Shown: positions 20 through 11,885 of the stretch, in pieces
How positions within the stretch are numbered: the first letter of the stretch is position 1
How the letters are laid out: every line of letters begins with the position of its first letter
DNA from: Phyllobates terribilis
Taxonomy: Eukaryota
DNA length: 64,000 bases
Assembly: GCF_046119375.1 (NCBI RefSeq)
Contig: NW_027362764.1
Coordinates: forward strand, 206,522,001-206,586,000
Direction: 5' to 3'
Translations under genes and position numbers: made by a program
The notes under the pieces: model-generated
The model's input: the letters and a program-made list of their open reading frames with translations, nothing else
Databases searched by the model: none
Told to the model about the DNA's origin: nothing

Positions 20-2055
20 TGATGGGGATGAGGGGCCATGCATACCAGGATTGGAGGATGAGGAGTACCATACTTACCAGGACACTGATGAGGAGCCATA
101 CGTACCAGAATGGGGATGAGGGGGGCCATACATACCAGGATTGGGGATGAGGGGCCATACATACCAGTATAGGAATGAGGGGGGCCATACATACCTGGAT
201 TGGGGGATGAGCGGTACCATGCTTACCAGGATAGGGATGAGGGGTACCATGCTTAGCAGGATATGGTTGAGAGGCCACACATACCAGGATAGGGATGAGG
301 AAGCCATACATTCCAGGATTGGGGGATGAGGGGTGCCATGTATACCAAAATATGGATGAGGGGCCTTACATACCAGGATAGGGATGAGGGGGGCCATACA
401 TAACAGGATACGGATGAGAGGCCATGCATACCAGGATATGGATGAGGGGCCATGCATATCAGCATTGGGGATGAGGGGGCCATACACACCAGGATAGGGG
501 GATGAGGAGGCCATACATACCAGGATAGGGATGAGGGGTGCCATACATACCAGGAAAGGGATGAGGGGTGCCATACATGCCAGGAAAGGGATGATGGGTC
601 ATACATACCAGGATTGGGGATGAGGGGGTACCATGCATACCAGGATAGGGATGAGGGGTGCCATGCATACCAGGATAAAGATGAGGAGTGCAATACATAC
701 CAGGATTGGGGATGAGGGGGGCCATACATACCAGGATTGGGGATGAGGGGGGCCATGCATACCAGGATTGGGGATGAGGGGAGCCATACATACCAGGATA
801 TGGATGAGGGGCCATGCATACCAGGATACGGATGAGGGACCATGCATACCAGGATACGGATGAGGGGTCATGCATACCAGGATACGGATGAGGGGCCATG
901 CATAACAGGATAGGGATGAGGGGCCATGCATAACAGGATACAGATGAGGGTCCATACATACCAGGATAGGGATGAGGGGGTACGATGCATACCAGGATAG
1001 GTATGACAGGGGCCATGCATACCAGGATTGGGGATGAGGGGGGCCATACATACCAGGATAGGGATGAGGGGGCCATACATGCCAGGATTGGGGATGAGAG
1101 GGTACCATGCATACCAGGATAGGGATGAGGGGGAACCATGCATACCAGGATAGGGATGAGAGGGTACCATGCATACCAGGATAGAGATGAGGGGGTACCA
1201 TGCATACCAGGACAGGGATGAGGAGTGCCATGCTTACCAGGATAGGAATGAGGGGTAGCATGCATACCAGTATAGGGATGAGGGGGGCTATACATGCCAG
1301 GATAGGGATGAGGGGCCATACATACCAGGATAAGGATGAGGGTCCATACATACCAGGATAGGGATGAGGGGGTACCATGCATACCAGGATAAGTATGAGG
1401 GGAGCCATGCATACCAGGATAGGGATGAGAGGGTACCATGCATACCAGGATAGGGATGAGGGGGTACCATGCATACCAGGACAGGGATGAGGGGTACCAT
1501 GCTTACCAGGATAGGAATGAGGGGTAGCATGCATACCAGTATAGGGATGAGGGGGGCCATACATACCAGGATAGGGATGAGGGGCCATGCATACCAGAAT
1601 TGGGGATGAGGGGTGCCATGCATACCAGGATTGGGGGATGAGGAGGCCATACATACCAGAATAGGGATGAGGGGTGCCACACATACCAGGATAGGGATGA
1701 GGGGCCATGCATACCAGGATTGGGGATGAGGGAGTACCATGCATACCAGGATAGGGATGAGGGGGTACCATACATACCAGGATAGGGATGAGGGGGTGCC
1801 ATGCATACCAGGATAGGGATGAGGGGTGCCATACAAACCAGGATTAGGGATGAGGGGTGCTATGCATACCAGGATAGGGATGAGGGGTGCAATGCATACC
1901 AGGAAAAGGGGTGCCATGTATACCAGGATAGGGATGACTGGTGCCATGCATACCAGGATAAGGATGAGGGGTGCCTTGCAAGTAAGGATGATGGAGGCCT
2001 TGCATATAAGGATGAGGGGTGCCATGCATACCGGGATGGAGGGGTGCCATATACC
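20..2055 (+). repeat. G-rich minisatellite, ~28-31 bp unit (consensus ~CCATGCATACCAGGATAGGGATGAGGGG)
   Basis: Dozens of degenerate tandem copies of cat(g/a)cataccaggat(a/t)gggatgagggg; explains the repetitive HPYPGM/LIPILVC ORFs. Confidence 0.97.
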
Positions 2056-2192
2056 AATTTGGACAATATTAACAGAATTGGGGGACATCTTTAATATAAC
2101 CAGGGATGTGTCCCTCTGTCCGAAGCCTCTATAGACTGCACAAGCGCGACGCGCCTGTGCAGTCTGGCTCCAGACAGAAAAACGCATCCAGC

Positions 2193-2742: not shown

Positions 2743-3633
2743 ATGGTTTCCGTCCAGGATTTGGCTCAACGCTTGCAGGGATTGTCTCTGGAGGAGGCCG
2801 AGCTACAGCAACACGTGAGTAGCTGTTCTGGAGCGCATTTTGTGGAACCCAAGGTAGGACTGCCTGATGTTTTTTATGGTAAACAGCAAGGTTTTTTTTC
2901 CTTTAAAAATGCTTGTTTGTTATATTTTCGTTTGAGACCAAGGTCCTCTGGGAATGAATCACAGTGCATTGGTTTTATTATGTCACTTTTACACAATGAA
3001 CCACAGGGGTGGGCCTTTTCTCTCCAACCTAATGATCCATGCTTAAGGTCTGTAGAAGAATTTTTTTCTGCTATGGGTCTATTATATGACGATCCTGATA
3101 GAATCTCATCTGCTGAGGCAGAACTCAGGCGTTTGAATCAGGGGTCAGGTGATGTTGAAAATTATTGCACACACTTCAGAAGATGGGCTTCAGAAGTCTT
3201 ATGGAATGATCCTGCTCTGAAATGTTTATTTCTTGCTGGTCTGAGTGAAAGGGTTAAGGATCTGCTAATTGCATTCCCTGCACCTGAAACTCGGCAGGAT
3301 GCCATGCAATTAGCTGCTCGTGTGGACAGGAGGCTGAGGTTCAGGCTGAATGAGGTAAATACTCCTGTAATGTCAGGTCCTAGTCCCCAGAAAATCTGCT
3401 CAGATGGCGGAGAACCGATGGAGGTTGGGGCGATGTCACTCCGCTCTCAGGAAAGAGACCGGAGGTTCGCTAAGGGATTGTGTCTTTATTGTGGTAAAGC
3501 TGACCATTTGATTAAATATTGTGAGCTTCGTTTAAGTAAAGAAAAAAAAAAAGGTCAGGTACGCCCATATTGCTTTGTTTACGCTCTGCAGGACTATTTC
3601 TTTCTGGGAGTACTACTTTGCAGGGAGATTTGA
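2743..3633 (+). CDS. Gypsy gag (retrotransposon gag domain + CCHC zinc knuckle)
   Basis: 296-aa ORF with PEPMEVG-like motif (EPMEVG) and [14 protein letters not shown]. Confidence 0.88.
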
Positions 3634-5240
3634 TTGAATTTCAGGTATTTGTGGATTGTGGTTCAACACTTACTGTGATTGATAAAGGGTTTTTGGAAAA
3701 ACTTAACTTGAAATCCAAACCTTTGTCATCACCTATTTCTGTGATTGCAATTGATAACACTCCCTTGAAATATATTACTCACAAGGTTGCTGCATTTCCC
3801 CTCACTATCAATGGAGTTCACCAAGAAATTTTGGACTTGATTGCATTAGATAATTTATCCTCTCCGGTTGTTCTAGGATTGTCTTGGTTAAAACGGCACA
3901 ATCCTCTACTGGACTGGTCTACTAATGTGATTAAGTCTTGGAGTCCGAAGTGTTATGATAAATGTTGTAATGGTCGCATTGCGGCTGTGGAAAAATGGAA
4001 ATTACCGGTACCTATTCAAGATTTTTGGAGGGTTTTTTCGGAGGAGGAGTCGCGAGATTTACCTCCTCATAGGGATTATGATTGCGCAATTGAGTTTGTT
4101 CCGGGAGCTACTCTTCCCAAGAGTCGCTTGTTTAATCTGACTATCCCTGAAAGAAAGGCCTTGGAGGAATACATACAGACTAGCCTGGCTGCTGGTCACA
4201 TTAGACCTTCTAAGTCGCCAGCGGCAGTTGGATTTTTCTTTGTTGAAAAAAAAGGACGGGGGTTTACGTACATGTCTGGATTTTCGTGAAATTAATAAGA
4301 TTACGGTACGCAATTCCTGCCCATTGCCGTTAATTCCTGACTTGTTTAACCAGTTAGTGGGGGCCAAGTGGTTCTCTAGAATTGATCTCCGGGGGGCATA
4401 CAATGTGTTACGAGTGAAGGAGGTTGATGAATGGAAAACTGCTCTTAACACTTCGGTTGGTCATTTTAAGAATCTGGTGATGCCTTTTGATCTTACCAAT
4501 GCACCTTCCTTTTTTTCAGAACCTTATTAATGACATCCTGAGACCTTTGATTGGTAAAAATGTGGTTGTGTATTTGGATGACATTTTGATTTATTCACCA
4601 GATCTAGAGTCCCATTTGTAGAGTGTACGTGAAGTTTTTCAGTTATTGAGTGATAATTCACTCTTTGCTAAGCTGGAGAAATGTGAGTTCGCTGTGCAGA
4701 AAATTAGTTTTTTGGGCTACATTGTCTCCAGCGAGGGCTTTGAGATGGACCCTGTGAGGGTTCAGGCTGTGCAGGAATGGCCTAGGCCTATTGGTTTGAA
4801 ATCTATACAGAGATTTTTAGGGTTGCCAATTATTGCAGGAAATTCATTAAGAATTTTTCTGTAATTGTTAAACCTCTAACCGATCTCACCAGGAGAGGTG
4901 CGAATACGGTCCACTGGACTACTGAGGCCATTGAAGTGCTTAAGTATCTCAAAGAGAGGTTCAGTTCTGCCCCTATCCTTATGCAGCCTGATGAGACCAA
5001 ACCTTTTTTGGTCGAGGTCGATGCTTCATCGGTGGGGGTCGGAGCAGTTTTGTCTCAGGAGAACAGGGATGGAGTACATCCTTGTCTCTTCTTTTTGAAA
5101 AAAATTTCGGAAACCAAACTGAATTATGATGTTGGAAATCGGGAGTTGCTGGCTATTAAACTTGCGTTTGAACATTGGCGTCATTTTTTGGAAGGCGCTA
5201 GATTTCCTATTCAGGTTTTCACAGATCATAAGAATTTGAG
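3570..5240 (+). pseudogene. Gypsy pol (PR-RT-RNase H), frameshifted and truncated
   Basis: FVDCGS protease site, [27 protein letters not shown] and RNase H motifs spread over several frames (breaks near 4250, 4510 and 4820). Confidence 0.92.
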
Positions 5241-5797
5241 TTTAGGAGCTGGTACCCTCTGCGGCCTGATCCCTCCACATCTGTGTAGATTCAGGCGCAC
5301 GGGTGGCTTCCGCACTCGCCTTGCCCCTGGGACCCCCTCTGTCTCTGGAGCCATCCCTCTGCTCCCGTCCTCTCTCAGTCTTTCCTCCTGGGCCTCTCAG
5401 ACTAGGCCCCGCTCCTTTCTCCACTCCTCCTGAGTAGAGCTCCTCTAGAGCTCCTGCTCCCCAACTCTCTCTCCTCTGTTCTGTCTCCTCTGTCTGACTG
5501 ATCTCCTACAAGATGGTTCCCTTCTTATACTCCTTCTGCCTGTGCTCCCCTGTACTACTTCCTCCACCCACACCCACTACATGGTTCCCCCTCTCTTGGT
5601 TCCCCCCCTTCCAACCAGGGACAGGGCTCAGCACTGTACGCATGCATCTTGCCCCTCCTGCTGGTCTGGAATGGTGTAGTGTTGGATGCAGGTGGGTGGG
5701 TCCCGGGCAGTACTCCATTCTTACCTGAGAGTGGGGCACCACACCTCTGGGTGAGATGCAGTACTTCTGTGGTGACTGAACCCACCGGGGCACCACA
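5241..5797 (-). mobile_element. Partial LTR, same family as solo LTR 12928-14140
   Basis: Minus strand starts TGTGGTGCCCC at 5797 and aligns by eye with 12928 onward (ctcacccagaggtgtg, ctctcaggtaag, ccctgtccctgg). Confidence 0.8.
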
Positions 5798-6929: not shown

Positions 6930-7150
6930 AAGAACCTCTCTGACCAAAAGAGCTTACATATTAAAGGTGGGAAAGAGAAGACATTGCTGACCATAAGAGC
7001 TTGAAGTTTACAGGCGAGAAAGGGAGCAAGGGCCCAGCTGACCATAAGAGCTTATACTCTACTGGAGGGTGAGGACCCCCTGATTATAAGAGCTTACACT
7101 TTACAAGAGATAGAGGTCCCTCTGACCATATGAGCTTACACTCTACAAAA
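6930..7150 (-). repeat. Five tandem copies of an L2-clade LINE 3'-tail motif
   Basis: ctgaccataagagcttacactcta at 6940, 6987, 7038, 7080, 7122; reverse complement TAGAGTGTAAGCTC...CAGGG resembles the L2 tail motif TAGATTGTAAGCTC...GGCAGGG. Confidence 0.65.
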
Positions 7151-7344
7151 GAGAGAGACTTACCCAGTGACTTTGCAGATGGAAAATTGCCCTGCTATAC
7201 AAACTGTGCTCCACTGAGAAACATTGATTTCTGATAACCCAGGTACTGACCCCCACTGTACAAGGCATGATAATCCTTAAAATGTCATAGCTGCAGGGCA
7301 TTATGGGGAAGCCCACCCAGCAATGCAAAATGTCGTTTGCCCGC

Positions 7345-7508
7345 TTCTAAAGCTTCAGTATTGTGGGAAATGGTGCTGGGCAAGTTTTATTTATTTCATT
7401 ATTTTTTTTAGAATCAAATCTCCAAATGTTTAAATCTGCGTGAAACCACAAATTTCAGGAAATTCTATGCAAACTTGATCTTCTGCGGATCAATCTGCTC
7501 ATCTCTGG
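7345..7508. mobile_element. Right end of a non-autonomous hAT (MITE)
   Basis: Ends GCTCATCTCTG, nearly the same TIR as the hAT end at 22597 (GCTCATCTCTA). Confidence 0.5.
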
Positions 7509-8123
7509 TATTCTGTTCTGAAAGTGAAAAACTTTGCAATTGATGTATTTCCTGTTGACACTACAGTTTATATTGCACCTTGCATTCTCGCTTTGTACAT
7601 GTGACTTGTGAGCTCAACCAGCCTGCATCACTCACAATATACCCAAAAAACAGTGCTTCACCAAATACATTTACATATATCCCTGCATTAATTGTTTGGA
7701 AGTATGTATATTTTCTTTTATTGGATTGTGGAGCTATTTCTTAGTTTAACCACTCTACATAAATGTGAGGATTTGTAAAAAGATATGATCAGTTGGACTA
7801 CTGTGATTCTGTTCTGAAAGATCTTACAATTTATGTATTTCCTGTGTACTGTCTAGATTCTGAACCACTGTACAGAAATTGCCATGATGAGGACCAGTGT
7901 GGTTGCCAAGTGCACAAATTAAATTCCCAAATCTTTCCCTGTCACTTGCCAGTTATTGCATTGTATTGCTCTGGTCGTTGTTCACTGATAGGATATGCAA
8001 ATTGCTTCTTCAGAAAGGAAGAGGACTAGAACTCTAGTGGAAGTAGCAATCCTAAATGTCAATATTGGCCCTCCAATGAACCTTGCCACATGACTTAAGA
8101 TAAAAGCTAAGCCAGAATCTCAA

Positions 8124-8168
8124 TTTCCAGACACGGTATTTCAGGATGTTGCCCCTCATCAGTGCAAA
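8124..8168 (-). ncRNA. Type I minimal hammerhead ribozyme (degenerate copy)
   Basis: Minus strand TTTGCA-CTGATGA-GGGGCAACATCCT-GAAA-TACCGTG-TC-TGGAAA: stem I, conserved core, stem II, near-palindromic stem III, GUC cleavage triplet. Confidence 0.8.
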
Positions 8169-8199
8169 GTATGAGATCTGATTTGGCTGGGTGATTCAG

Positions 8200-8568
8200 C
8201 TCATCACTGCGCACGTGTGGGAGCCAATCGTCACTGCGCACGCATGGCGACGTGCGACTTTACACTACACATTGCGCCAGCGTGGGTGACAGTATACAGT
8301 GCGCAAGTGTAGGACTTCAACAAGACCATGTGACATCGACGCAAACCAGGGACAATTCAAATTGAGTGGGCGGCGACAAGCCAGACTGAATGAAGTGAAG
8401 AACACTAATATGACTAAACGAGCAAGCAAGATATAACTATATTAAGTGGTTTTTACAAAAGATTATTACGCCAAATTTAATGCAAAAAGCATGTTACCGA
8501 TGCATATTGCATCACTAACAACAACCTGGGGGCAATTTACAAGCTCCAACTGACATGATAGGTTCCCT
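8200..8568. mobile_element. T2/Kolobok-type MITE, right portion
   Basis: Ends TGATAGGTTCCCT|TTAA, matching the AGGGAACCTGTCA TIR class with a TTAA target. Confidence 0.65.
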
Positions 8569-9883
8569 TTAAGACTGGGATCTAAGGAGAAAGAATTCTC
8601 CTTGTGGAGAGTGACAAGCCAGGCCTGGCATGTCAGAGTGAGAAGACTTATGCGCCATGCATGCTCCTCTGGGAAATTAAATATGCAAATTGCCTCTTCA
8701 GAGAGGAAGGGAACTTGAACTCTATTGCCACCTTTTGGAAGTAGCAATCCTACAAGTCAATATCGACCCTTTAACGAGTTATAGGATTAAACTTTTGCGT
8801 CACACTTGGCTTCTGTACCTTGATTGCTCTATTGAATAACAACCTAATTGGTCTTCTGGATTTAACTTTGGAGTGTTAGTTTATTTATCTGCTTTATATC
8901 TCACTATCCTAAAGTATTATTATATTAGCCCCAAAAAAATCACTTCAAACTTCAGGTCATCAGATGCCTCACTTTGCAGTATGACGAGTTACAGGAAGTA
9001 GGAATGGGTTAAAATATCTGTGTTCCCATATGTCAAACTACATACAAATATAGCAAAGAGTCAGACTTGGTTTTCTGCAGGCAAGCCATCAGACAGTGAG
9101 GGAAGGAAATTCTATTACCTATAGTGAAGGTATAATGCATATGAAGAGGAACCGCCTGGTCTAAAACAATGCACTTATATAAATTATTTATTTTATTCAT
9201 TCCATTCTAGCATTCCACAGAAAGAAAGTTAACCTCTATGTCTCACCAAATATATCACAGTTAACACTGCTTTAATGAATTTACTGTATTTTCTTTACAT
9301 TATTGTTATTATTATGCTACAACTATTATGCTACAACTGAAAATCACAATTATTTCCTGATTGACAAGTAAAATAGTATTCACATTTAACCTGTTTTAAC
9401 ACTAACAAAAATGTGTGTGTCTTTCTGATATACAGTATGTCTGTGTTTCCTACTTAAACTCTTCATTCACATAAAAACCATGAAAACTAGCAAGGATGAC
9501 TATATAATTAAACTCACATTTAGGGCTCCCGCCTGTGTGGCAGAGGGAGCAGGGATGTGGGGGGTGGCAGGTGCAGCAGAGCACACCACTTCCATTTCAC
9601 GCTGGAGTGCGCTTCAATCAGCCATCAAGTGTGGGGAAATATGTGAGCTCAGCGCCGGAGCCAGCATCAAAAGCAGGGACACGGTCGATGATGTAAATAT
9701 ACCCTATGAAGGGGATAATAATTCACTAAGGGAAAATATTGTAGCATCGGCGTTTCTGCCTCCTGCCGGGCAGAGACGTTGTTCCCCTCACTGCCGCGGT
9801 CCAGGCCCGGCATCCTCCCGCTCCCGTGCTGCTTTGGCGCGCACCTCACGCAGCTTCCCGGGCACTGTGCTTAGGGCGCGCGC

Positions 9884-11885
9884 TAAATTCGAGAAATGCC
9901 TTTTTGAGCAGACCTCTCTACCGTTCCTGGGCTATATTATCTCCGAGACTGGGCTGCGGATGGATCCCGAGAAGGTCTCTGCCGTCTTAAAGTGGCCCCG
10001 ACCGGAGGGGTTGAAGGTGATTCAGCGATTCCTGGGCTTCGCAAATTATTACTACCTCTTCTTTCTTCATTTCTCCTCCCGGACTGCTCCCATCTCCGCG
10101 CTCACCCGTAAAGGAGCAAATCCCAGGGAATGGACTTCCGAAGCGGAGGAGGCCTTCGTCTCCCTAAAACTAGCCTTCTCCTCCGCTCCTGTGCTACACC
10201 GTCTGGATTGCAACAAGCAGTTCTTCCTGGAGGTTGATGCATCCTCTTCCGGAGCTGAAGCGGTGCTCACCCAGCAATCCTTGTCCGGAAGAATGGTAAC
10301 CTGCAGCTTCTTCTCCAAGCTCTTCTCTTGGTCCGAACGCAACTACTCCATAGGAGATCGTGAGCTGCTGGCCATCAAATTAGCGCTGGAGGAGTGGCTC
10401 TATTTGCTTGAGGGGGCTCTGCACCTGGTGGTCATCTACACTGACCATAAGAACCTCGCTTATTTACAGAACGCCCAAAGACTAAATCCACGCCAGGCCA
10501 GGTGGTCTCTATTCTTTTCCCAATTCTGCTTCACCCTGCACTACCGCCCAGCGGACAAGAACATTAAGGCTGATGCTCTATCCCGCTCTTTCCTATCTTC
10601 CGACCAAGAGGAGGAGCCTCTACATATCATTGATCCCTCCAAAGTAACGACTGTGGCTCCGTTTGACCTGTCTCATCTTCCACCTTTGTAGCGGTTCCAG
10701 ATCGTAAGAAGGTTCTACTCTGGGGCCATTCATCCAAACTAGCCAGTCATGCTGGCCAGAGGAAGACCTTTCTGCTCATCGCCTGACATTACTGGTGGGC
10801 TTCCCTGGGCAAGGATGTTGCGGACTTTGTCGCGGCTTGTTCCGTCTGTGCCCGTAACAGGGTTCCCTGGCACCTTCCATCCGGCCATCTCCTTCCTCTT
10901 CCCATGCCTTCCACTCCGTGGCAACACATTGCAATGGACTTCATTACGAATCTCCCTGTTTCTGCCGGTTGTACTGTCATTTGGGTGGTCGCTGACCACT
11001 TTTCTAAACTGACCCACTTCATCCCTCTGCCTGGTCTTCCATCTGCATCTGTGCTGGCTAAGGACTTCATCCATCACATTTTTCGTCTTCACGGCCTACC
11101 TCTCCACGTTGTGTCTGATCGCGGGGTCCAGTTCACTTCGCGCTTCTGGATGTCTCCTTGGATTTCTCCTCTGCTTATCATCCTCAGTCCAATGGTCAAG
11201 GGGAACATATCAACCAGGTAACCAGGTCCTTATCAGCTTTCTTTGGCACTTTTTCAATACTAACCATAACGATTGGGTTGAGCTCCTGCCCTGGGCCGAG
11301 TTCTCCTATAACAACCATGAGAGCAAGTCTTCTTCTAAATCCCCGTTCTTTGTGGTCTACGGTTAACACCCCCGGATTCCATTTCCCGTCTCCTCTTCAA
11401 TGGACAATCCTGCCGCGGAGTCTCTGCTCAGCGAATTTTCAGCTATTTGGGAAGACACTTGATCTGCACTTCTTCAGTCCCCTGAGCGGATGAAGAGACA
11501 TGCTGATAAGAGACGTTTGGATCTGCCTCAATTCCGTCCGGGAGACAAGGTCTGGCTTTCCTCCAAATATGTTCGTCTCAAGATACCTTCCTATAAGTTG
11601 GGTCCGCGGTTCATCGGTCCGTTCGAGGTTCTGAACCAAATCAATCCCGTGGCTTACAAGCTGAAACTCCCAGTCACCTTACGGATTCCCAACTCCTTTC
11701 ATGTATCCCTCCTCAAACCTGTTGTCCTTAATTCTTTCTCTGACAATCCAGGTACCACTCCAGCTCCAGTCTCTGCTGAAGACATCTTTGAGGTAGAAAA
11801 CATTTTGGCCACCAAGAGAGTAAGAGGAAAGACTTTCTTTCTTGTGGATTGGAAGGGGTTTGGCCCTGAGGAGAGGTCTTAGGAA
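9884..11885 (+). pseudogene. Gypsy pol remnant (RT end, RNase H, integrase, GPF/Y, chromodomain; chromodomain resumes at 22606)
   Basis: AKFEKCLF, EVDASSSG, WQHIAMDFI, SDRGVQFTSRFW, YHPQSNGQ, KLGPRFIGPF, FLVDWKGFGPEERS then EPRENIHAPHLLKKF after the hAT; several stops and frameshifts. Confidence 0.92.

What the first reader, a model, noticed from the sequence alone, without database searches (positions are those of the whole stretch)
7990..8780. Retrozyme-like head-to-tail repeat carrying a hammerhead ribozyme
The minus strand at 8124-8168 has a full type I hammerhead core (CUGAUGA / GAAA / GUC) with stems I and II. Stem III (ACCGTG) leaves a 1-nt loop, so it could fold only as a dimer, the known property of Penelope-associated minimal hammerheads. 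The same non-coding block recurs 688 bp away in the same orientation; subtracting the ~375-bp MITE between them gives a ~310-nt monomer. Tandem short monomers with a hammerhead are the architecture of retrozymes, which yield self-cleaved and circular RNAs (known from newt satellite 2 and other metazoans). Whether this family has been described is unknown to me. This copy has stem I and III mismatches and may be inactive.
Basis: partly seen in the sequence, partly recalled or inferred. Interest (0 to 1): 0.75.

Follow-up and report, generated by a model that had tools for sequence, protein, structure and literature searches.

The report
Lone decayed hammerhead repeat in frog
This is one old, broken, non-coding copy of the small hammerhead-ribozyme repeats ("retrozymes", like newt satellite 2) already known from amphibians; it has one ribozyme motif rather than a tandem of them, so it is an ordinary relic.

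Summary
The hammerhead motif is real. On the minus strand at 8168-8124 all core boxes are present and in register with helices I, II and III. A descriptor scan finds only this site in the window, against 0.007 expected by chance. The flanks add a closing helix (8187-8172 with 8122-8106).

The motif is the canonical amphibian type I kind.

The "head-to-tail repeat" is only an 87-97-nt block (7993-8079 and 8681-8777, 76-87% identical). The second block has no hammerhead beside it. A full covariance-model scan finds no second hammerhead in 64 kb, and Tandem Repeats Finder calls no array here.

The locus therefore looks like one insert slightly longer than one unit, with terminal redundancy and possibly a long target duplication. 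It carries a roughly 430-bp foldback inside.

Unit length cannot be fixed from this locus; it lies somewhere between 257 and 698 bp. This copy has a G10.1-U11.1 wobble, a G-G mismatch in helix I and a broken helix III palindrome, and its active fold is 8 kcal/mol above the minimum. It matches no Rfam hammerhead model.

Earlier notes of this scan report similar hammerhead repeats elsewhere in this genome. Verdict: new member of a known kind, low interest.

The parts
7930..7972 (.). Possible left copy of a long target-site duplication (F)
   Evidence: Local alignment with 8788-8830 in target-duplication geometry scores 28; 1.3% of 1000 shuffles do as well. About two thirds of columns match. Suggestive only.
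7993..8079 (-). Terminal direct repeat, 3' copy (block A). It ends, on the minus strand, with the octamer ATTTGCAT (7995-8002)
   Evidence: Matches 8681-8777: 87% over 47 nt and 83% over 42 nt, with a 10-nt indel; 76% over 97 gapped columns, E about 1e-15. Homology stops at both edges.
8080..8105 (-). Spacer between the hammerhead domain and block A
   Evidence: Read from the sequence. There is no counterpart next to the second block.
8106..8187 (-). Hammerhead domain including the loop-1 closing helix (8187-8172 pairs with 8122-8106)
   Evidence: Duplex of the two flanks is -13.0 kcal/mol; 3.6% of 5000 control flank pairs from the window do as well. The closing helix is kept in the minimum-energy fold.
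8124..8168 (-). Type I hammerhead core motif. Helix I: 8168-8163 with 8129-8124. C3-A9: 8162-8156. Helix II: 8155-8152 with 8146-8143. G12-A15.1: 8142-8139. Helix III: 8139-8131. C17: 8130. Predicted cleavage falls between 8130 and 8129
   Evidence: 1 hit against 0.007 expected. Defects are the G10.1-U11.1 wobble, the G-G mismatch at 1.3/2.3, and an extra C in loop 3. No Rfam hammerhead match.
8236..8666 (.). Foldback (MITE-like) segment inside the unit; boundaries uncertain
   Evidence: Inverted arms 8238-8298 and 8605-8664 score 33, p about 0.007. Terminal 12/14 inverted match with only a 2-nt flanking repeat. Fold z=-3.8. No other copy in the window. The left end overlaps a local repeat of a 20-nt motif (8201-8220, 8228-8247, 8293-8312), which blurs the boundary.
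8681..8777 (-). Terminal direct repeat, 5' copy (block A'), with the octamer at 8683-8690; no hammerhead upstream of it
8788..8830 (.). Possible right copy of the target-site duplication (F')
   Evidence: p about 0.013.

Best explanation
The stretch from about 7973-7993 to 8777-8787, on the minus strand, is one old non-coding insert of a hammerhead-bearing short retroelement. It is of the amphibian non-LTR retrozyme / satellite-2 kind, which a recent preprint derives from the terminal repeats of Penelope-like elements.

It contains slightly more than one unit. It starts inside one unit (block A'), runs through a single canonical-type type I hammerhead, and ends after the same block (A) of the next unit. 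This is the layout expected when a multimeric or circular RNA is copied for a little more than one turn and integrated (inferred).

A roughly 430-bp foldback probably landed inside it later (inferred).

With only one hammerhead, a transcript of this locus could be cut once at most and could not release a unit-length RNA for circularisation. The mismatches and the unfavourable active fold make even that cut unlikely. It is a relic and not a working retrozyme.
For: Motif:
- It is present and non-random: 1 hit against 0.007 expected.
- An independent closing helix lies outside the descriptor (3.6% of controls).
- The architecture matches the canonical metazoan type I hammerhead as defined in PMC4209133.
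- It matches axolotl HHR_Amex2 in Rtz353, sequence in the supplement of PMC7229834: 4-bp helix II, a 5-nt loop of the form CA..A, U at 11.1, and helix III UACCGUG against CACGUG.

Locus:
- Terminal 87-97-nt direct repeats have sharp edges.
- There may be a 43-nt target duplication. Metazoan retrozymes are reported to have long target duplications (PMC7229834).
- No coding capacity: no Pfam hit in any open frame of the element, and no Penelope-type ORF among the window's large ORFs.
- GC is about 44%.
- Both blocks end with an octamer.

Leads I did not check: earlier notes of this scan describe octamer-bearing hammerhead repeats of about 332 bp and an old 1.7-unit copy elsewhere in this genome.
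Against: - No Rfam hammerhead model matches, even in a 111-nt scan at E up to 10.
- The 86-nt domain folds no better than shuffles (z=-0.35).
- The active fold is -10.0 against -18.3 kcal/mol for the minimum.
- No other family copy could be fetched, so membership in a repeat family rests on this one locus plus unverified notes.
- The 257-nt remainder is not unusually self-paired (z=+0.2), unlike published retrozyme circles.
- The target duplication is weak (p about 0.013).
Confidence: 0.6

Rival explanations
1. It is a remnant of an autonomous Penelope-like element. On this reading the two blocks are what is left of its partial-tandem terminal repeats (pLTRs), and the coding part has been lost or was never copied.
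For: - Penelope-like elements carry type I hammerheads in their pLTRs and insert as partial tandems (PMC4209133 and PMC11167929).
- Earlier notes report many such elements in this genome.
- An ATG inside the core (8159-8157) opens a 35-codon frame. In the anole element the ORF starts at helix II.
Against: - There is no reverse transcriptase or GIY-YIG remnant in or around the element.
- The hammerhead is not the minimal Penelope type: helix II is 4 bp and not 7-8, there is no bulge after A9, and helix III is present.
- Insertions of these elements are usually truncated at the 5' end, which would not leave a hammerhead-proximal piece without the ORF.
Confidence: 0.17
2. The hammerhead-like motif is a chance match in unrelated repetitive DNA, and the two 90-nt blocks come from an ordinary local duplication.
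For: - No Rfam hammerhead hit.
- No thermodynamic signal.
- Wobble and mismatch at conserved pairing positions.
- With 0.007 chance hits per 64 kb, a genome of many gigabases would hold hundreds of chance matches.
- The left flank shows that old local duplications do occur here (7435-7707 with 7739-7981).
Against: - The closing helix, the loop-1 geometry and the resemblance to the axolotl motif were not part of the descriptor.
- The motif sits inside a discrete element with terminal repeats.
- Amphibian genomes, this one included according to earlier notes, carry very many real hammerhead repeats, so the prior favours a relic.
Confidence: 0.15
3. One reading: a tandem of ~310-nt hammerhead monomers (an active or recently active retrozyme) interrupted by a MITE, able to yield self-cleaved circular RNA.
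For: - Direct repeat at 688-698 bp spacing.
- A foldback lies between the blocks.
- The hammerhead is of the dimer-dependent amphibian type.
Against: - Only one hammerhead exists.
- The second block is not preceded by hammerhead-homologous sequence.
- There is no Tandem Repeats Finder array.
- The published working criterion of two consecutive units with complete hammerheads is not met.
- The blocks have diverged by 13-24%.
- The active fold is disfavoured.
Confidence: 0.05

Closest known systems
Axolotl non-LTR retrozyme Rtz353 with HHR_Amex2 (Cervera and de la Pena 2020, PMC7229834)
   Same: - Non-coding short unit.
- Canonical type I hammerhead with a 6-position helix I, loop 1 and a closing stem.
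- 4-bp helix II with a 5-nt loop (CAACA here, CACUA there).
- U at 11.1, so the base of helix II is weak.
- A two-pair helix III capped by an ACGU-type loop, which needs a second copy to form a stable extended helix.
   Different: - Here there is one hammerhead in about 1.1-1.4 units, not long tandem arrays.
- Loop 3 has an extra C that puts a C-C mismatch into the dimeric helix.
- Helix I has a G-G mismatch.
- I saw no sequence similarity outside the ribozyme when comparing by eye. A computed alignment was not run because the published sequences have no reference id.
- Expression is unknown.
Newt satellite 2 (Epstein and Gall 1987; snRNA-type promoter, Coats et al. 1994, cited in PMC2220036)
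   Same: A hammerhead repeat with weak helix III that is active as a dimer. An octamer motif sits in the unit (7995-8002 and 8683-8690 here).
   Different: Satellite 2 is a ~330-bp tandem satellite with proven transcription and cleavage. Here there is a single dispersed relic, and promoter function is untested. The octamer detail of the newt promoter is from my own memory, because that paper is not held in the library.
Minimal hammerheads of Penelope-like elements (Cervera and de la Pena 2014, PMC4209133)
   Same: Type I topology, the need to dimerise, and a setting in partial-tandem terminal repeats.
   Different: The minimal form has a 7-8 bp helix II, a 4-5 bp helix I, an unpaired base between A9 and 10.1, and no helix III or loop 3. 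None of these holds here. No RT-endonuclease ORF is adjacent.
The ~332-bp hammerhead repeat family reported by earlier notes of this scan in the same genome (s1-238352, s1-211438, s1-220956)
   Same: Same genome. A type I hammerhead, an octamer block upstream of the hammerhead, and old copies longer than one unit.
   Different: Identity with that family could not be tested, because no sequence of it was available to me. A 332-bp unit would require a 356-366-bp insert here, whereas the foldback I can delimit is about 430 bp.

Membership tests
Hammerhead ribozyme, canonical metazoan type I | Core boxes C3-U4-G5-A6-N7-G8-A9, G12-A13-A14, A15.1-U16.1 and H17, in order, with helix I open | tested here: met
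   Sequence at 8162-8130 on the minus strand. The descriptor gives 1 hit against 0.007 expected.
Hammerhead ribozyme, canonical metazoan type I | Helix II of 4 bp closed by a G10.1-C11.1 pair | tested here: inconclusive
   Four pairs are present, but 10.1-11.1 is a G-U wobble (8155 with 8143), and so is 10.4-11.4. Axolotl HHR_Amex2 also has U at 11.1.
Hammerhead ribozyme, canonical metazoan type I | Helix I of about 6 bp followed by loop 1 and a closing stem | tested here: met
   5 of 6 pairs (G-G at 8127 with 8165). The internal loop is UAC on one side and U on the other. The closing helix 8187-8172 with 8122-8106 has -13 kcal/mol; 3.6% of controls do as well.
Hammerhead ribozyme, canonical metazoan type I | Short helix III (1-2 bp) capped by a small palindromic loop that allows dimerisation | tested here: inconclusive
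   A-U and U-G pairs capped by ACCGU, which is the ACGU palindrome with one extra C. The dimeric helix would have 8 pairs around a C-C mismatch (read from the sequence).
Hammerhead ribozyme, canonical metazoan type I | Match to an Rfam hammerhead covariance model | tested here: not met
   No hammerhead family at gathering score, nor at E up to 10 in 4 kb or in 111 nt.
Hammerhead ribozyme, canonical metazoan type I | Self-cleavage after C17 | not testable with these tools
   This needs in vitro transcription. The active fold is 8.3 kcal/mol above the minimum in this copy.
Non-LTR retrozyme (metazoan) | Tandem units with at least two consecutive complete hammerheads | tested here: not met
   One hammerhead only. 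No Tandem Repeats Finder array. Criterion taken from the preprint 10.64898/2026.07.22.740005.
Non-LTR retrozyme (metazoan) | Short non-coding unit, GC below 50%, no LTR, primer-binding site or polypurine tract | tested here: met
   No Pfam hit in any frame. GC is about 44%. By eye, the blocks lack TG..CA ends and no tRNA primer-binding site follows the 5' block.
Non-LTR retrozyme (metazoan) | Long target-site duplication | tested here: inconclusive
   7930-7972 against 8788-8830, p about 0.013.
Non-LTR retrozyme (metazoan) | Many related copies in the genome; linear and circular unit-length RNA | not testable with these tools
Metagenome scans and the ORF look-up found nothing.
Penelope-like element | RT plus GIY-YIG ORF between terminal repeats | tested here: not met
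Penelope-like element | Minimal hammerhead architecture (long helix II, bulge after A9, no helix III) | tested here: not met
   Compared with the description in PMC4209133.
MITE / foldback insertion (8236-8666) | Terminal inverted repeats, a target duplication of typical length, and other copies | tested here: inconclusive
   Arms are significant and the fold has z=-3.8. Only a 2-nt flanking repeat is present, and there is no other copy in the window.

The most novel reading that the evidence does not exclude
The locus could represent a distinct anuran retrozyme family, separate from the ~332-bp one noted elsewhere. Its unit would carry an octamer-bearing promoter block. Its insert of about 1.1 units, bounded by a ~43-bp target duplication, would record the integration of a rolling-circle cDNA by Penelope-type machinery.
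Probability: 0.15. Interest if true: 0.4.

Novelty: new member of a known kind. Interest (0 to 1): 0.2.

Why it matters
It matters little on its own. It adds one more dispersed, dead copy to the hammerhead repeats already known from amphibians, and already flagged several times in this genome by this scan.

It has modest value as a worked example. A solitary copy with terminal redundancy, and perhaps a long target duplication, fits the model in which retrozyme RNA is copied for more than one turn and then integrated. It also shows that Rfam hammerhead models miss decayed amphibian copies.

Tried and rejected

Searches that came back empty:
- Two exact-pattern scans of metagenome contigs, one for hammerhead helix II and one for the octamer block.
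- A word search with the 93-codon spurious ORF, tried as a way to reach other copies.
- A literature search for the motif string, which returned only unrelated primers.
- Look-ups of the scan's own notes by sequence and by relatives.
- The Coats et al. 1994 paper is not held in the library.

Step left out:
- A computed alignment with the axolotl Rtz330 and Rtz353 units, because those sequences exist only as paper text without a reference id. Only short motifs were compared by eye.

Readings considered and rejected or left undecided:
- An LTR-type retrozyme. The blocks have no TG..CA ends, there is no primer-binding site, and the hammerhead lies outside the repeats.
- A relation between the element and the neighbouring ~300-bp duplication. 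No similarity was found.
- Continuation of that host duplication to the right of the insert. The alignment was not significant.
- A degenerate second hammerhead half at 8210-8181 (p about 0.046; model hit at 8226-8290 with E=2.5). Too weak to claim.
- Other ways of splitting the unit: a 228-nt piece between two exact copies of a 10-mer, and the direct repeat 8322-8412 with 8571-8652. These cannot be decided from one locus.

Full report
**Setting**

The window is TE-dense vertebrate DNA. Earlier notes of this scan call the species a frog, the golden poison frog; I did not verify that.

The finding lies between two truncated Gypsy-type pol fragments, at 2743-5433 and 9480-11882. The other large ORFs of the window are BED zinc-finger (hAT-like), Tc1/mariner, integrase and SCAN-domain remnants. 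None is a Penelope-type RT-endonuclease.

**The hammerhead motif**

Read on the minus strand, 8168-8124 gives these parts:
- helix I 5' strand UUUGCA
- CUGAUGA (C3 at 8162 to A9 at 8156)
- helix II GGGG with UCCU, loop CAACA
- GAAA (8142-8139)
- UACCGUG, then U16.1-C17 (8131-8130)
- helix I 3' strand UGGAAA

A descriptor that demands the core boxes, a 4-bp helix II, a paired 15.2-16.2 and at least 5 of 6 helix I pairs hits only this site on both strands of the window. It averages 0.007 hits in 300 dinucleotide-preserving shuffles.

Outside that 45-nt motif the flanks form a further helix, 8187-8172 with 8122-8106. It lies behind a small internal loop (UAC on one side, U on the other). Its duplex energy is -13.0 kcal/mol, and 3.6% of 5000 control flank pairs from the window reach that value.

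This gives the canonical metazoan type I layout: helix I, loop 1 and a closing stem. The closing helix was not part of the descriptor, so it counts as independent support.

**Which kind of hammerhead**

PMC4209133 defines two kinds.
- Canonical metazoan motifs have a 6-bp helix I, a 4-bp helix II, and a 1-2-bp helix III capped by a small palindromic loop.
- Penelope minimal motifs have a 7-8-bp helix II, a 4-5-bp helix I, an unpaired base after A9, and no helix III.

The present motif fits the canonical kind.

The supplement of PMC7229834 prints the axolotl retrozyme Rtz353. Its HHR_Amex2 reads CUGAUGA-UGCC-CACUA-GGCU-GAAA-CACGUG-UA. The two motifs share:
- the same helix II length
- the same loop length, with C-A at the start and A at the end
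- U at 11.1
- the same helix III, apart from a C-to-U change at 15.2 and one extra C in the loop

The need for a partner copy is the known property of amphibian retrozyme hammerheads. It is not specifically a Penelope trait.

**State of this copy**

- The 10.1-11.1 pair is a G-U wobble.
- Helix I has a G-G mismatch.
- The extra C would put a C-C mismatch in the centre of the dimeric helix III.
- The 86-nt domain folds no better than shuffles (z=-0.35).
- Forcing the active fold gives -10.0 kcal/mol, against -18.3 for the minimum.
- No Rfam hammerhead family matches: not at gathering score, not at E up to 10 in 4 kb, and not in 111 nt.

**The repeat**

Only a short block recurs. 7993-8079 matches 8681-8777 at 87% and 83% in two ungapped pieces either side of a 10-nt indel, or 76% over 97 gapped columns.

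Homology stops sharply at both edges. The sequence that leads from block A to the hammerhead (8080-8175) has no counterpart beyond block A' (p=0.80). The sequences on the other side of the two blocks are also unrelated (p=0.56).

A covariance model built from this hammerhead domain was run over all 64 kb with filters off. It finds nothing else; the best other hit has E=0.6.

Tandem Repeats Finder reports no array over the locus.

The published working criterion for a retrozyme is two consecutive units with complete hammerheads. It is not met.

On the minus strand the order is: A', about 510 nt, hammerhead, 44 nt, A. This is one unit plus a terminal redundancy of 87-97 nt.

**Edges of the insert**

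The DNA just outside the two blocks shows similarity in target-duplication geometry: 7930-7972 with 8788-8830, score 28, with 1.3% of shuffles as good.

If real, this is a roughly 43-bp duplication around an insert of about 815 bp. Metazoan retrozymes are said to have long duplications. I treat this as suggestive only.

The left flank is itself an old, unrelated ~300-bp duplication, 7435-7707 with 7739-7981. It shows no similarity to the element.

**The interior and the unit length**

- 8238-8298 and 8605-8664 are inverted arms (score 33, p about 0.007).
- 8236-8666 folds with z=-3.8, while the remaining 257 nt fold at z=+0.2.
- The ends match 12 of 14 in inverted orientation, but only 2 nt are repeated outside them.
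- No second copy exists in the window.
- The left end overlaps a thrice-repeated 20-nt motif.
- There is also a direct repeat, 8322-8412 with 8571-8652. It has an exact 10-mer on either side of a 228-nt piece.

The unit length depends on which of these is a later insertion. It could be about 257-267, about 450, or 688-698 bp.

A 332-bp unit, the size reported by earlier notes, would need a 356-366-bp insert that I cannot delimit.

**Other features**

- Both blocks end, on the minus strand, with ATTTGCAT, the octamer motif. Newt satellite 2 is transcribed from an snRNA-type promoter (cited in PMC2220036).
- An earlier follow-up note describes an octamer block in an old 1.7-unit hammerhead copy elsewhere in this genome.
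- This agrees with my reading, but promoter function is untested here.
- No open frame of the element matches any Pfam family.

**Interpretation**

The best reading is a solitary, old copy of slightly more than one unit of an amphibian retrozyme-type hammerhead repeat. It was probably integrated from a more-than-unit-length cDNA and later hit by a foldback. It is now inactive. I give this a confidence of about 0.6.

Rivals:
- a coding-less remnant of a Penelope-like element (0.17)
- a chance motif in duplicated DNA (0.15)

A recent preprint argues that vertebrate retrozymes derive from Penelope terminal repeats. The first two readings are therefore close relatives.

**Limits**

Other attempts to reach further copies found nothing.

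The family consensus, the true unit length, the copy number and expression therefore remain untested.

A full alignment to the axolotl units was left out because those sequences have no reference id.

The scan has found hammerhead repeats of this kind before on other DNA of this genome.

Noticed in passing
window 7435-7981: An old direct duplication of about 300 bp (7435-7707 matches 7739-7981; score 84 against a shuffle maximum of 62). It lies immediately left of the element and is unrelated to it.
   Followed up: partly
window 6933-7157: Five tandem copies of a 42-43-nt unit (TRF period 42, 78% matches). The repeat family is unknown.
   Followed up: no
window 8201-8312: A 20-nt CpG-rich motif (TCATCACTGCGCACGTGTGG and variants) occurs three times just upstream of the hammerhead, counted on the hammerhead's strand. 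On the hammerhead strand one copy reads GCAGUGAUGAG, weakly like a second hammerhead 5' half (p about 0.05).
   Followed up: partly
window 8052-8159 (minus): The AUG formed by A6-U7-G8 of the hammerhead core opens a 35-codon frame that runs into block A. It has no Pfam match. It recalls Penelope elements, whose ORF starts at helix II, but is probably meaningless here.
   Followed up: partly
   Followed up: no
window 74-2187 (minus): Long overlapping open frames made of a proline-rich repeat (PHPYPGMHG-like). This is probably a minisatellite and not a gene.
   Followed up: no
window 2743-5433 and 9480-11882: Two different truncated Gypsy-type gag-pol copies on the plus strand bracket a roughly 4-kb mosaic of non-coding repeats that contains the finding.
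   Followed up: partly
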